Shown one piece after another: positions 33,068 through 36,611 of a DNA stretch of 64,000 nucleotides. Every line of letters begins with the position of its first letter. The first letter of the stretch is position 1. The translations under genes were made by a program, and so were the position numbers. Location of the stretch: contig CDMY01000493.1 of NCBI GenBank assembly GCA_001179505.1, positions 1 through 64,000 of the forward strand, in the 5' to 3' direction. The notes beneath the pieces were generated by a model, which did no database searches, was not told the DNA's origin, and was given only the letters and a program-made list of their open reading frames with translations. This stretch comes from Vitrella brassicaformis CCMP3155. Taxonomy: Eukaryota; Protista; Chromerida.

Positions 33068-35903
33068 TCAGGTTGACGGCACAGTGACTCCGAGGATGTC
33101 TGAAGCAATCTCGCTGATGTCTTCGATGCCCAGGATGGCGGCAAAGTCGGGGACGAGGATGTTGTCAGGAAGAATCTCACTCTCCCACACGTAGGTGAAC
33201 TTGCCCACGGTGATGGAGTAGAGGAACAGCCGGTCGCCCCCGTCGTCGATGAAGTCCACACCCACACCCACACTGCTCGTCTCCACCTCGGCGGACCCCT
33301 GCGGGACGCCGTCGTCGCCCACACCGGCACCGATCTGGGCGTAGACCTTGCCCAGCCGGCCGAAGCCTACTTGGCCGAATATCTCCTGACTTCCCTCGGG
33401 GTCATCGTCGGGGAAATCGCCGTTGAGCACCAGCTGCCAACCGTCACCCCAGTTGCCTGAGTGAGTGGAGAAATGCAGCAACGAGTTAACAATGTCTTGT
33501 CTAAATGCGTTGATGTCTGTCTGTCACTGTTCGTTCACCTTGAAAGTCAGTCTCTCTTTCGTCAAAGTCTCTGAGGACGGAGAACTGCCTCCCCAGTGTG
33601 CCGACGCTGACGGCGTACTCGGTGTCGTTGACGTCGGCACCGACGGCGACTGAGACGCTCCTCCAGCCCACAAACACCTCGGTGGCCAGCTCCTCATCGT
33701 CGTCGGTCGACGGGTCCTGCACGTCGTCGAAGTCATGCCGCACGGCCACCTCCACGTCGCGCACCTTGACCCGCTGGCCGTAGTCTCTGTCGGAGAAGTC
33801 GATGTTCGTCCCGGACTCCACCCCCCGCGCGACCACCTCCACAGCTGTCTGGGCATCGTCGAAGTCACGGTCGACTCTCACACCGTACGCGCCGTAGGAG
33901 ACGCCCACACCGCCTTCAATGTCCGATTCGTCGGTCGACACGGACACCTGGGCCTTTCCGAAGCCGACGTTGGTCGATGTCGCTCGGTCTTCGAGGCCGA
34001 CACCCACACCCACGTAGCCGTAGTCATTCCCCACCTGCACGGCCGTCTCTCTGTCCTCGAAGTCGCGGCCCCACGTGACCGCCCAGTTGTCGTACACAAT
34101 CTCGTTCGACACCTCTTTAATCGGCTTGCCGCCCAACTCTTTGTCGGAATCGTATCGGAGCGTGTTGCTCCCCAGGAAGGCCGCGGCGAGGAGTGCCGCG
34201 GACACGGCCGCGCGGTCCTTCTCGTCCACTGTGTTGAGGAAGGTGCTGATCTGGCTGACGTCGCCGTTGGCCACCGCGAGGGCGGTCAGGATTTGCTGTC
34301 GCTCCTCTGGGGGGATCTGGTTCAGAAACGCCGCGATGTCCTCGGCCGCGGCGTCGTCCTGCAGCATCTTTGTGACGACGTCGAGGGGGTCTTCTGTCAC
34401 GCTTTTCGACGTTGACAACATCCGCTTCGCTGCGAGCACCGAGCCGGGCTTGAGGGGGCTGAAAGGGTTCTCCCTCTCCACTGTTCGCGTGGCTCCCAGT
34501 TTTCGCATTGATCCGAACTGCGCGAAGGCCGTGGGGCCCATCGCTGCTGCTTGGGCGAAGTGCGATTTCGGCTGTCGGCCCCAGGCACAGATGCTCTCGA
34601 CAGACGGCTTGGTGACGAAGGTGGCCATCATGCACGAGATTGTGTAGCGGTCGTAGTCCTTGAACATCATCGGACGCAAACTGAAGACAATCTCAGCTTC
34701 TGCCAGGAAGACACAACACACAGAGAGAGTGGAATGCACATATCATATGGACGATCTGTGTGTGCGTGCGGGCTGGTGTCGATCAGCGCACCTGAGTCCT
34801 CCGTCCCCCCGCCACTCTGCAGCTTGATGACTTTGAAATGCACGTCCTTGTTGATGGGACACCCATTGAGAATCAGATGGTACACGCAACGCGGGTTGCT
34901 CGACTGTCGGCCCTCCGGACACACCGCCGTGCACTCCATCGGCCACGGCCAGACGTCCTCTCCCGCACCGTTGACCGTCGATTCGAAAATCATCCCACTG
35001 ACACGAGACGGAGAGACACAGACAGAGAGACGGGACAGATGAGGGGAGAGTGGCGGGCGGTCGCGTCGTCTGTCTCGCTCACTCGTCGTCATTGGTGGTG
35101 GCAGTGTTGAATTCAGTGCCGCCGATCACCCCGGCAGAGAGCATGTGTCCCGTCACGGCGGCCTTGACGAACTTGGGCATCTTCTTGCTGCCCTCGTACG
35201 CCTCCTTCGACGTCGTCTTGTGCTCCCACTTGGCCGTCGCCAGACATCCGCCCGAGCCATCGCCCACCGGATCCGGCCGGTTGTCGTTGGTGCTCTGCAG
35301 CCGCCTTCTGTCCCCTTGAGCATTGGTGGTGCGTGGGCATGCGCATGTGATAATGGCGTTGTTCTCAGGGCCATGGACGCGGAGAACGTTGACATAGTAC
35401 ACGTACCTGTCCGTGACCGTCTTCTTGGTCTTGCACCCGTCGTACGTGGTCGAGGCCGCCAGTGCGTGTCGGCCCGGCCCGTAGAAGTCCTCCACCCAGT
35501 GGGCCACGCACCTCTTGTCGCTGATGGCGTCGTGGAAGCCTCCAGGGAACTTGCCCTCAAACGCGGGGTTGCGCGCCATGGGGACGGCCGCCGTCATCTT
35601 CTCGTCGGAGCACCACGCGCCTGGCGGCACCTTCTTGGGCAGGCCAGTCCTTTCCAGCCTCTCGCGATGGGAGATGTACTGGCTGGGGTCGAATTTGGCT
35701 TTCTGTGGCCCGCGCAGCTTCGGCCCATCTGGCTCGGGGACGCCTTTGATGGGTGGCGGTGGCGGTGGTGGCGGTGGTTGATATGGGCGGTCGGGGGGTG
35801 GAGGCGGCATGAAAGGACCGAGGAACGAGCCCCTGCCGGGGTCTGCACGGGCGATGATGGGCAGCAGGAGAGGCACGAGGACGCTGACACGGAGACGGCC
35901 CAT
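33068..35903 (-). CDS. Large secreted protein: signal peptide, Pro-rich arm, ZP-like module, C-terminal beta-strand repeats
   Basis: Leader MGRLRVSVLVPLLLPIIARA. Four exons join ORFs 35079-35951, 34667-35092, 33501-34739 and 33068-33481 in frame. The Cys pattern matches ZP-N and ZP-C (see findings). Confidence 0.85.
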
Positions 35904-36611
35904 GGCTGCCGGCGGGAGAAAGAAAGAAATTTTCAAAGTTGAACATACCACAATTGTCCCCCAAGTTGAGCTCGCAGTCCCTCCAGCGGATTCTCCGAGA
36001 GCCGTTCAAGCAGTGCGTCGGTCCTTCCCCTTCTTCTCCCGTTCCCCCAACTGTTTTCCTGCTGCATGCAGTCACTTCCACCAAGTCACGTGCCAAGAGA
36101 AAGTGACAGCAACGAGCCAGCCAGCCAGCCAGCCACTTAGTCACACTATGACACGCACCAAGTGGATGGATGGACGGATGGATGGACATACAGACAGACA
36201 GCAGGATTACAAACAAATACACACACACACATACACATAGACACCCTTCCCCGAGTCACGTTACGGTATCGACATGAAGACGCATGCATGAGCTACCTAC
36301 ATACACGGGAACGCATCCACAGACACCCACTCATACAGACAGACAGACAGACAGACAGACAGAAAACACGACAGGCAGGCAGGTAGAGAGACACGCAGAG
36401 TCGGCTGACGTGACAGACGACGCAGAGACAGACGGGCGCTTTACCTCGCCCTTCCACCCTCACGCCTACCGCCACGTCTGCCGTCTGCGTGTCAGCCTCA
36501 CTCGTTGGTCGGTTAGTTGAAAAAGAGCAAAAAGACGCCACACCCACACAAGACACCAGCACCAGCAGCAGCAGATCCATGTCCCTCACCCACCCCCAAC
36601 ATAGATAGCAT

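What the first reader, a model, noticed from the sequence alone, without database searches (positions are those of the whole stretch)
33068..35903. Apparent complete zona pellucida (ZP-N + ZP-C) module in a secreted protein of a unicellular alveolate-like alga
Seen in sequence: after a signal peptide and a Pro-rich arm, 35612-35334 encodes CSDEKMTAAVP...KRCVAHW...YDGCKTKKTVTDRYVYYVNVLRV...AIITCAC. After a linker containing RRRLQ, 35130-34585 encodes VIGGTEF...WPMECTAV...YHLILNGCPINKD...EIVFSLRPMMFKD...YTISCMM...SIC. Established knowledge: ZP-N follows C..d.M.v.v / C / CGT..Y.N.v.v / i.f.C, and ZP-C follows C.At / Y.lI.nGCp / rFsf..F.F / vy..C. ZP modules polymerise into extracellular filaments (egg coats, uromodulin, tectorins, cuticlins) and are regarded as mainly an animal feature. 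Inference: this may be a filament-forming coat, cyst or sporangium wall protein in a non-animal lineage. The introns have the host's CA/GT style, which argues against animal contamination.
Basis: partly seen in the sequence, partly recalled or inferred. Interest (0 to 1): 0.8.

Follow-up and report, generated by a model that had tools for sequence, protein, structure and literature searches.

The report
Egg-coat-type ZP module in alga
A spliced, transcribed gene of the alga Vitrella brassicaformis, a free-living relative of malaria parasites, encodes a secreted protein very probably carrying both halves of the zona pellucida module that animals use for egg coats; a 2026 review still calls this module animal-only.

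Summary
The minus strand at 35903-33068 carries a four-exon gene of about 858 codons. All three GT..AG introns are backed by spliced contigs in public runs, so both halves lie in one reading frame.

The genome is Vitrella brassicaformis CCMP3155. The protein has a signal peptide, a Pro-rich arm, a 12-cysteine module, a helical spacer, and a Cys-free acidic C-terminal domain of about 320 residues.

**ZP-N, tested on the window's own exon 1.** An AlphaFold2 model was compared with 48,161 solved chains. The ten best matches are all ZP-N domains (uromodulin Z 9.0, ZP3 Z 8.3). The best non-ZP match scores 4.9.

**ZP-C, tested only through a paralogue.** It is split over three exons here. The paralogue is 44% identical and all 12 window cysteines have counterparts in it. 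Its model gives ZP structures as the 26 best Foldseek matches (E 4.5e-8; ZP-C Z 8.0-8.4).

**Sequence evidence is weak.** Pfam ZP-C scores E 0.08. The family profile's only PDB hit is the ZPD egg-coat chain, E 0.015.

Seven more loci in this genome match exon 1, and relatives occur in gregarines, colpodellids and other early apicomplexans. Six of eight Vitrella copies carry RRRR-L after ZP-C; this copy has RRRLQ in the interdomain linker instead.

The scan has already noted ZP modules on other DNA of this genome. UniProt names two paralogues "ZP domain-containing protein". No paper found describes them.

The parts
35844..35903 (-). Start codon and signal-peptide-like N-terminus (residues 1-20, MGRLRVSVLVPLLLPIIARA)
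   Evidence: Translation. It is the most hydrophobic 19-residue window of exon 1. No signal-peptide predictor was available, so this is read from the sequence.
35745..35813 (-). Pro-rich arm (residues 31-53, PPPPPDRPYQPPPPPPPPPIKG)
   Evidence: Translation.
35334..35624 (-). ZP-N domain (residues about 94-190). Cysteines are C98, C132, C157, C187 and C189.
   Evidence: The AF2 model of window:35085-35672:- has pLDDT mostly above 90 over this core. An exhaustive VIA search gave ten ZP-N domains as the ten best matches: UMOD Z 9.0 (3.1 A over 92 residues) and ZP3 Z 8.3 (2.4 A over 89). The best non-ZP match scored 4.9. In Foldseek the top 31 matches are all chains of ZP proteins.
35172..35333 (-). 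Interdomain linker, with a 30-residue insert specific to this paralogue. The insert carries RRRLQ (35309-35295) and is followed by the family-wide motif C-x-A-T-A-K-W-E-H (C220).
   Evidence: Alignments A1 and A3. pLDDT is below 60 over most of the insert (piece residues 117-140), while the motif strand 144-149 is modelled more confidently.
35083..35171 (-). Tail of exon 1. It corresponds to the first part of the region that aligns with ZP-C structures in the paralogue model.
   Evidence: Mapped onto the P0016 model. VIA ZP-C alignments start at model residue 146-155.
34998..35082 (-). Intron 1 (85 nt, GT..AG)
   Evidence: Spliced contigs in X1 and X7. Boundaries.
34792..34997 (-). Exon 2, the core of ZP-C (FESTV strand, WPWPMECTAV, YHLILNGCPINKD). 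Cysteines are C296, C300, C311 and C320.
   Evidence: Pfam PF00100 ZP-C scores E 0.083, 13.4 bits, below the cut-off. It is 54% identical to P0016 ZP-C. The paralogue's ZP-C scores Z 8.0-8.4 against UMOD, betaglycan, GP2 and ZP3.
34700..34791 (-). Intron 2 (92 nt, GT..AG)
   Evidence: The loose end of an X1 contig at 34702 continues at 34795-34810.
34584..34699 (-). Start of exon 3, the end of ZP-C (EIVFSLRPMMFKD, YTISCMM, SIC). Cysteines are C365 and C380.
   Evidence: Translation. Aligned to strands 241-246 and 258-266 of the P0016 model.
34122..34583 (-). Spacer of about 150 residues. It includes a two-repeat helical-looking insert (34170-34391) that the paralogues lack.
   Evidence: Alignment A3. 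Weak MgtE_N hit at E 0.12 only. The paralogues go from ZP-C to the C-terminal domain in 50-130 residues.
33540..34121 (-). C-terminal domain, first part. It is Cys-free and V/D/G-rich, with four [RH]-D-F-[DE]-[DE] motifs.
   Evidence: It is 67-80% identical to the Vitrella paralogues and 31-53% identical to apicomplexan relatives. No credible Pfam or PDB sequence match: the best was DUF2333 at E 0.013, below its cut-off. Composition.
33457..33538 (-). Intron 3 (82 nt, GT..AG)
   Evidence: Spliced X1 contig. Boundaries.
33068..33456 (-). Exon 4, the second part of the C-terminal domain, plus the stop codon. There is no hydrophobic anchor.
   Evidence: Translation. Alignment A5. Hydropathy maxima are below 1.4.

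Best explanation
**What it is.** This is an expressed four-exon gene of Vitrella brassicaformis for a secreted extracellular protein. After a signal peptide and a Pro-rich arm it carries a divergent but genuine zona pellucida module. The module is a ZP-N Ig-like domain, a flexible linker and a ZP-C Ig-like domain. A spacer of about 150 residues follows, then a Cys-free, acidic, probably beta-rich C-terminal domain of about 320 residues with no known relatives.

**Family.** It is one of eight matching loci in this genome. The family (ZP module plus this C-terminal domain) goes back at least to the common ancestor of chrompodellids and Apicomplexa.

**Shown:**
- the gene model and its splicing;
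- the predicted ZP-N fold of this protein;
- the predicted ZP-N and ZP-C folds of a close paralogue;
- the conserved cysteines;
- the taxonomic spread.

**Inferred:** by analogy with uromodulin and egg-coat proteins, the module probably polymerises. It would do so by exchanging linker strands between subunits, giving extracellular filaments of a cell, sporangium or cyst wall.

**Inferred, processing.** In most paralogues a protease would cut at RRRR-L just after ZP-C and detach the C-terminal domain. The protease could be furin- or subtilisin-like. It could also be an ASP5/plasmepsin V-like enzyme, because the RRL core resembles the Toxoplasma TEXEL motif. That resemblance is from my own knowledge and was not tested.

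**Inferred, this copy.** Here the motif sits in a variable loop of the ZP-N/ZP-C linker. This subunit may therefore keep its C-terminal domain and be processed differently.
For: - **Gene and splicing:**
- **Organism:** 72.7 Mb genome in 1064 contigs. The paralogues are named Vitrella brassicaformis CCMP3155 by NCBI.
- **ZP-N on the window's own sequence:** pLDDT is above 90 for most of the core. In Foldseek the top 31 matches are all ZP proteins, best E 6.4e-4. An exhaustive search of 48,161 chains gave only ZP-N domains in the top 10, Z 9.0 down to 5.2, against 4.9 for the best other fold.
- **Whole module in paralogue P0016:** pLDDT 72, pTM 0.67. The 26 best Foldseek matches are all ZP modules, E 4.5e-8, with 259-303 alignment columns for the 17 best, which cover both domains. 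VIA gave ZP-N Z 9.0 and ZP-C Z 8.0-8.4, with generic Ig domains at 4.7 or less. All ten listed ESM Atlas rows are animal PF00100 clusters.
- **Transfer to the window:** 44% identity over 294 columns, with all 12 window cysteines matched in the paralogue.
- **Sequence level:** PF00100 on exon 2 at E 0.083. PF23344 ZP-N in 2 of 8 paralogue pieces at E 0.005. The family profile's only PDB hit at E 10 or better is chain 28yj_A, the ZPD egg-coat filament entry whose molecule is named uromodulin. The E-value is 0.015 and both halves align in the right order.
- **Database naming:** UniRef names paralogues P0001 and P0016 'ZP domain-containing protein'.
- **Family and spread:**
- **RRRR-L after ZP-C in 6 of 8 copies:**
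Against: - **Weak sequence statistics.** No Pfam model reaches its cut-off on this gene or its paralogues. Profiles of single halves find nothing in the PDB.
- **ZP-C not folded directly.** The window's own ZP-C was not modelled because it is split over three exons.
- **Disulfide pairing unchecked.** No model coordinates are available.
- **Cysteine count departs from the canon.** The family has 10 conserved cysteines and Vitrella copies have 12, not the canonical 8 or 10. The extra pair lies right after ZP-N.
- **No EHP strand.** In the paralogue model the stretch after ZP-C is a helix and then disorder.
- **No membrane anchor**.
- **No post-ZP-C cleavage motif** in this copy.
- **No direct functional evidence.** Nothing speaks to polymerisation, location or life-cycle stage. 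Some animal ZP modules, such as endoglin and betaglycan, do not polymerise.
Confidence: 0.75

Rival explanations
1. A tandem of two generic Ig-like beta-sandwiches that only resembles a ZP module by convergence. Under this reading there is no common ancestry with animal ZP proteins and no ZP-type polymerisation.
For: - Pfam models stay below their cut-offs.
- hhalign against a Pfam-positive ZP protein of the same genome gave nothing.
- Identity to animal ZP structures is only 9-20%.
- Z scores of 8-9 lie in a range that the tool's own note calls common.
Against: - Both domains pick ZP structures specifically, in the right order, well above immunoglobulin folds: Z 8-9.7 against 4.9 or less.
- The family profile's only PDB hit is a ZP protein, with both halves colinear.
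- ZP-typical motifs are present: C-G-T...Y-x-N in ZP-N, and C-x-A, L-I-x-N-G-C-P, F-S...F and C-M-M in ZP-C.
- UniRef's naming of two paralogues as ZP domain proteins is independent of my analysis.
Confidence: 0.1
2. A true ZP module that does not polymerise. It would act as a soluble or surface ligand-binding or adhesion module, as in endoglin and betaglycan. The conserved C-terminal domain would be the functional part.
For: - No EHP, membrane anchor or post-ZP-C cleavage motif in this copy.
- The C-terminal domain is far better conserved than the ZP module: 31-80% against 20-45%.
- Betaglycan ZP-C and endoglin are among the matches.
Against: - The best matches are polymerising ZP proteins: UMOD, ZP3/ZP1, ZPD and GP2.
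- Six paralogues keep a basic cleavage motif exactly where animal polymerising ZP precursors have theirs.
- Eight matching loci in a walled alga fit a structural matrix role.
Confidence: 0.14
3. Contaminating animal DNA, or a recent transfer from an animal.
For: ZP modules are otherwise known from animals.
Against: - The window is 57% G+C, and the gene's three short GT..AG introns are spliced out in contigs of runs that hold this DNA.
- Seven more loci on seven other contigs of this genome match exon 1.
- Relatives with the same two-part architecture occur in chrompodellids and several apicomplexan lineages.
- The search of 1.84 billion representatives found only 13 relatives at E 0.001 or better. 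The nine that carry an organism name are all from Vitrella or other chrompodellids and apicomplexans.
Confidence: 0.01

Closest known systems
Uromodulin (UMOD) / GP2 / ZPD polymerisation region
   Same: The order is ZP-N, then a flexible linker, then ZP-C. It gives the best structural matches for both domains (Z 9.0 and 8.4). ZPD is the only sequence-profile hit. Shared motifs are C-x-A, L-I-x-x-G-C-P and F-S-x-x-x-F in ZP-C. Most paralogues carry a basic motif right after ZP-C, where UMOD has its cleavage site.
   Different: - Identity is only 12-17%.
- There are no EGF or D8C domains.
- There is no GPI anchor.
- No EHP strand was recognised.
- An extra cysteine pair lies right after ZP-N, and another lies inside ZP-C.
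- A 320-residue Cys-free acidic domain follows.
- In this copy the basic motif lies in the interdomain linker.
- The organism is an alveolate alga.
ZP3 (type I ZP module, egg coat)
   Same: The ZP-N superposes at 2.4 A over 89 residues, Z 8.3. ZP-C scores Z 8.0. The C5, C6, C7, C8-like spacing in ZP-C is of the simpler, type I kind.
   Different: - There is no ZP-C subdomain.
- There is no transmembrane helix.
- The domain context is different.
- Identity is 12-16%.
Membrane-anchored ZP protein elsewhere in the same genome (G000:C553, locus L013)
   Same: It is from the same organism and is extracellular. Its ZP-C passes Pfam's cut-off (27.7-29.9 bits).
   Different: - It is a different family: hhalign shows no significant link.
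- It has a transmembrane helix and a canonical C-x-x-x-C tail.
- It lacks the acidic C-terminal domain.
Choanoflagellate 'ZP-like' domains
   Same: They are another claimed non-animal occurrence (review PMC13361971).
   Different: The review calls those incomplete. The module here is predicted to have both domains and a full set of cysteines. It also lies far outside Holozoa.

Membership tests
Zona pellucida (ZP) module | ZP-N: Ig-like beta-sandwich distinct from other Ig sets | tested here: met
   The window's own exon-1 model gave only ZP-N domains in the top 10 of 48,161 chains. Z runs from 9.0 to 5.2, and the next fold scores 4.9. Foldseek's top 31 matches are all ZP proteins.
Zona pellucida (ZP) module | ZP-N cysteines C1-C4 on strands A, C, E'/F and G, paired C1-C4 and C2-C3 | tested here: inconclusive
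   C98 lies on the first strand, C132 just before the strand 135-142, C157 before the E/F hairpin, and C187/C189 on the last strand. These are the expected places. Pairing could not be measured because no model coordinates are given out.
Zona pellucida (ZP) module | ZP-C: second Ig-like domain with conserved cysteines C5-C8 | tested here: inconclusive
   Met for paralogue P0016: Z 8.0-8.4 against UMOD, betaglycan, GP2 and ZP3 ZP-C. The window's ZP-C pieces are 43-54% identical to it, with all cysteines kept. The window's own ZP-C was not folded because it spans three exons and the joined step was left out.
Zona pellucida (ZP) module | Sequence-profile membership (Pfam PF00100 ZP-C, PF23344 ZP-N; PROSITE PS51034) | tested here: not met
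   - PF00100 on exon 2 scores 13.4 bits against a cut-off of 24.6.
- PF23344 does not hit this gene. Two paralogue pieces hit it, best E 0.005.
- PROSITE could not be run.
- UniRef names two paralogues 'ZP domain-containing protein'.
- This lowers confidence in membership by sequence rules. It does not lower the fold assignment.
Zona pellucida (ZP) module | Cleavage site after ZP-C, followed by an external hydrophobic patch and a membrane anchor | tested here: not met
   This copy has no polybasic run after C380 and no hydrophobic anchor. No EHP strand appears in the paralogue model. Six of eight paralogues do have RRRR-L at the canonical place. Not all animal ZP proteins have this feature either (review).
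Zona pellucida (ZP) module | Polymerisation into filaments | not testable with these tools
   This needs EM of the native or recombinant processed protein.
Chrompodellid/apicomplexan 'ZP module + acidic C-terminal domain' family (unnamed) | Shared architecture and conserved C-terminal domain | tested here: met
   Exons 3 and 4 are 31-80% identical to the C-terminal domains of Vitrella, Rhytidocystis, Cardiosporidium, Siedleckia, Alphamonas and Piridium proteins. Most of these also carry the ZP-like module upstream.

The most novel reading that the evidence does not exclude
The ZP module is not an animal invention. A complete ZP-N + ZP-C module was already present in the common ancestor of chrompodellid algae and apicomplexan parasites. 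It arrived there either by descent from an early eukaryote or by an ancient transfer to or from animals. In that lineage it builds filaments of cell, sporangium, cyst or oocyst walls together with a new acidic domain. If so, the polymerisation mechanism of egg coats and uromodulin would also underlie parasite transmission-stage walls.
Probability: 0.35. Interest if true: 0.85.

Novelty: new variant of a known kind. Interest (0 to 1): 0.68.

Why it matters
A 2026 review still describes the ZP module as a metazoan synapomorphy (PMC13361971). Full-text searches for 'zona pellucida' with Vitrella, and for 'zona pellucida domain' with Apicomplexa, found no paper on the subject.

A two-domain ZP module in an alveolate alga, shared with gregarines and other early apicomplexans, would change where and when this polymerisation module is thought to have arisen.

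It would add ZP to the animal-like extracellular domains of apicomplexans. That remark is from my own knowledge and was not checked here.

It would also point to a candidate structural component of walls or cysts. Chromerids are becoming open to genetic manipulation: transfection of Chromera is reported in PMC12407925.

The fused, strongly conserved, Cys-free acidic domain is itself an undescribed domain.

Two caveats apply. UniProt's automatic naming has already flagged two paralogues. This scan has also reported ZP modules on other pieces of this genome, so this locus is one more member and not a first sighting.

Tried and rejected
- **Word search with exon 1** found nothing. Its length filter excludes the full-length relatives.
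- **Word searches with the P0001 C-terminal domain and with the full-length alignment A6**. The first added Vitrella paralogues, an Alphamonas and a Siedleckia protein and a metagenome copy of a Vitrella paralogue. The second listed only Vitrella family proteins already found. Both scored only the 8000 candidates sharing most words. They say nothing about Toxoplasma, Cryptosporidium or Plasmodium, so I could not confirm earlier notes that name Toxoplasma and Cryptosporidium.
- **The window's own annotated protein** was never returned by any search, so no database copy of the spliced protein was available.
- **Half-module profiles (A1, A2, A4) and exon 2 alone against PDB sequences** gave no ZP hit.
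- **Pfam on 20 family proteins** gave no ZP hit at E 1 or better.
- **hhalign of the family profile against the Pfam-positive ZP protein of contig C553** gave probability 0.4, which is not informative against a single sequence.
- **ESM Atlas feature search for the C-terminal domain** gave no usable hit.
- **PDB profile search for the C-terminal domain** gave noise only.
- **No complex prediction was run.** Strand-swapped ZP polymerisation is not what that test is built for.
- **Animal contamination** was rejected, as set out under the rival explanations.
Full report
**1. The observation**

I built a four-exon model from reading frames and GT..AG boundaries:
- exon 1, 35903-35083
- exon 2, 34997-34792
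- exon 3, 34699-33539
- exon 4, 33456-33071, followed by TGA at 33070-33068

The model has about 858 codons, with introns of 85, 92 and 82 nt.

Contigs of public runs that hold this DNA skip exactly 34998-35082 (runs X1 and X7, from two studies). They also skip 33457-33538 (X1). An X1 contig that ends at 34702 runs on with 16 letters found at 34795-34810, which is the junction 34699|34792. The gene is therefore transcribed, and spliced so that both halves of the module are in one frame.

I never joined the exons.

**2. Organism and family**

The assembly has 72.7 Mb in 1064 contigs. The paralogues retrieved carry NCBI names from Vitrella brassicaformis CCMP3155.

Exon 1 matches seven further loci on seven other contigs of the genome, at 36-51% identity. 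The same loci also match exon 2 and the C-terminal half of exon 3. That makes eight loci that share the whole architecture.

A profile of the ZP-N and linker region (A1) was scored by HMMER against 1.84 billion representatives. It found only 13 proteins at E 0.001 or better.

The species named by the sources for these hits, and for those of a later word search, are:
- Vitrella brassicaformis
- Selenidium serpulae
- Blabericola migrator
- Rhytidocystis pertsovi
- Cardiosporidium cionae
- Siedleckia nematoides
- Alphamonas edax
- Piridium sociabile

There are also unnamed contigs from sequencing runs. Two of those lie on compact, gene-dense eukaryotic contigs as single ORFs.

The family is thus confined, as far as HMMER sees, to chrompodellids and Apicomplexa. 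No animal is among the nine hits of that search that carry an organism name.

**3. Is it a ZP module? Sequence evidence**

This evidence is weak but points one way.
- Exon 2 alone hits Pfam PF00100 (ZP-C) at E 0.083, 13.4 bits, against a cut-off of 24.6.
- Two of eight paralogue pieces hit PF23344 (ZP-N), best E 0.005.
- A profile of the whole module (A3, 20 rows) has a single hit among 177,635 PDB sequences at E 10 or better. It is chain 28yj_A, the ZPD egg-coat filament, whose molecule is named uromodulin. The E-value is 0.015.
- In that hit the ZP-N segment aligns to ZP-N and the ZP-C segment to ZP-C, in order.
- UniRef names two paralogues (A0A0G4FWT2 and A0A0G4FAV0) 'ZP domain-containing protein'.

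Half-module profiles and whole-protein Pfam scans find nothing.

**4. Is it a ZP module? Fold evidence**

*(a) The window's own sequence.* I modelled residues 78-273 (window:35085-35672:-) with a 17-row family alignment. pLDDT is above 90 for most of the ZP-N core and the mean is 75.5.
- Foldseek against the PDB put only ZP proteins in the first 31 places, best E 6.4e-4 at probability 1.00.
- A search that does not lean on Foldseek aligned the model to 48,161 representative chains. The ten best were all ZP-N domains.
- Those ten include UMOD (Z 9.0, 3.1 A over 92 residues), ZP3 (Z 8.3, 2.4 A over 89), ZP1, ZPD, ZP2 and abalone VERL.
- The best unrelated chain scored 4.9.

*(b) The whole module.* The window's ZP-C lies on three exons, so I folded paralogue P0016, residues 70-410. 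pLDDT is 72 and pTM 0.67.
- The 26 best Foldseek matches are all ZP-module structures: UMOD, ZP3, ZP3/ZP1, ZPD, endoglin and GP2. The best E is 4.5e-8.
- The 17 best of these cover 259-303 alignment columns, which span both domains.
- VIA-align gave ZP-N Z 9.0.
- VIA-align gave ZP-C Z 8.4 against UMOD, 8.2 against betaglycan, 8.0 against GP2 and 8.0 against ZP3. Immunoglobulin Fc domains follow at 4.7 or less.
- All ten listed rows of the ESM Atlas search are animal PF00100 clusters.

*(c) Transfer to the window.* The window's pieces map onto that model at 44% identity over 294 columns.
- All 12 window cysteines have counterparts in P0016.
- The cysteines are C98, C132, C157, C187, C189, C220, C296, C300, C311, C320, C365 and C380.
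- They sit on or beside the strands where ZP cysteines are expected.
- All cysteines of the protein lie in the module.

**5. Departures from a canonical ZP precursor**

- The family has ten conserved cysteines. The extra pair is the second Cys of C-A-C and the Cys of C-x-P-T-A-R-W-E, right after ZP-N. Vitrella copies add another pair inside ZP-C.
- No EHP-like strand is modelled after ZP-C. The paralogue model shows a helix and then disorder.
- There is no transmembrane or GPI-type tail.
- Six of eight Vitrella copies, and one relative from a compact genome, carry RRRR-L or KRRLL just after the last ZP-C cysteine. That is the place of the animal cleavage site.
- This copy has no basic run there. 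It carries RRRLQ (35309-35295) in a 30-residue insert of the interdomain linker, between C189 and C220.
- This copy also has a helical-looking two-repeat insert of about 75 residues, within a spacer of about 150 residues, ahead of the C-terminal domain.

**6. The C-terminal domain**

It covers residues about 535-858, at 34121-33540 and 33454-33071.
- It is Cys-free and rich in V, D and G (15, 13 and 12%).
- It holds four [RH]-D-F-[DE]-[DE] motifs.
- It is better conserved than the ZP module: 67-80% within Vitrella and 31-53% in apicomplexans.
- It has no credible Pfam, PDB-sequence or Atlas match.

I did not fold it.

**7. Mechanism**

*Shown:* a secreted-type N-terminus, a ZP-type two-domain module, expression, a family of eight matching loci, and conservation across chrompodellids and apicomplexans.

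*Inferred from established knowledge of UMOD and egg-coat filaments:* ZP modules polymerise once the C-terminal propeptide is removed, and linker strands then complete the domains of neighbouring subunits. Vitrella cells and sporangia are walled, so a wall or coat matrix is the likeliest place.

For most paralogues the RRRR-L motif would release the C-terminal domain. The conserved Leu makes an ASP5/plasmepsin V-type 'RRL' site as plausible as a furin-type one. This is from my own knowledge and untested.

For this copy, cleavage would fall in a linker loop that may be closed by a C189-C220 disulfide. That would leave the halves joined and the C-terminal domain attached. This is speculation.

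**8. Comparison and novelty**

The closest known systems are the polymerisation regions of uromodulin, GP2 and ZPD, and ZP3.

A 2026 review calls the canonical module a metazoan synapomorphy and treats choanoflagellate ZP-like domains as incomplete (PMC13361971). Full-text searches pairing 'zona pellucida' with Vitrella, or 'zona pellucida domain' with Apicomplexa, found no relevant paper.

Set against this, UniProt's automatic naming has already flagged two paralogues. This scan has already reported ZP modules on other pieces of this genome: 17 notes, including paralogues with the RRRR site and the same C-terminal domain.

I therefore file it as a new variant of a known kind. It is a ZP module in a non-animal lineage, with an unusual cysteine complement, no anchor and a new fused domain.

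**9. Verdict**

It is not shown for a cleavage site after ZP-C, an EHP or an anchor.
- The function as a polymerising wall or coat protein remains inference.

Noticed in passing
window 35295-35309 (-) compared with L005:2100-2620, P0016, P0001, P0015, P0017, P0018: The motif RRR(R)LQ follows the last ZP-C cysteine in six of eight Vitrella paralogues. In this gene it sits in the ZP-N/ZP-C linker instead, in a similar local context (RRRLQSTND here, RRRLQTWND in P0016). The always-present Leu recalls the apicomplexan RRL (TEXEL) site of ASP5, more than a plain furin site.
   Followed up: partly
window 34170-34391 (-): A helical-looking insert with two similar units (DIAAFLNQIPPEERQQILTAL and QISTFLNTVDEKDRAAVSAAL). 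It is absent from the paralogues. The only hit is a weak one to MgtE_N (E 0.12).
   Followed up: no
window 33071-34121 (-): A Cys-free, acidic, V/D/G-rich C-terminal domain with four [RH]DF[DE][DE] motifs. It is better conserved across apicomplexans than the ZP module and has no credible Pfam, PDB-sequence or Atlas match. Its fold was not predicted here.
   Followed up: partly
L013:862-2667 (G000:C553, around 146929-147222): Another Vitrella gene whose ZP-C passes Pfam's cut-off (27.7-29.9 bits). It has a canonical QCYATP..FDGC..RFPVFRM..IYCEVALC pattern and a transmembrane helix. It belongs to a separate ZP family in the same genome. Two weaker PF00100 places lie on C227 and C272.
   Followed up: partly
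L016 and L017 (contigs of sequencing runs that carry P0004 and P0010): Relatives of the family are encoded as single uninterrupted ORFs on very compact eukaryotic contigs. One intergenic gap is only 27 bp, next to a DEAD-box helicase gene. The organisms are not named.
   Followed up: no
window 36100-36400: The stretch upstream of the gene is full of short low-complexity repeats, including (TGGC)n, (CATC/CGTC)n and (CAGA)n. The introns are also CA/GT/CT-rich.
   Followed up: no
window 33636-33661 and 34043-34096: Short contigs in the DNA-type runs X3 and X4 differ from the window at 3-5 clustered places within the conserved C-terminal domain. They are most likely pieces of paralogues laid on this copy, not alleles.
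   Followed up: no
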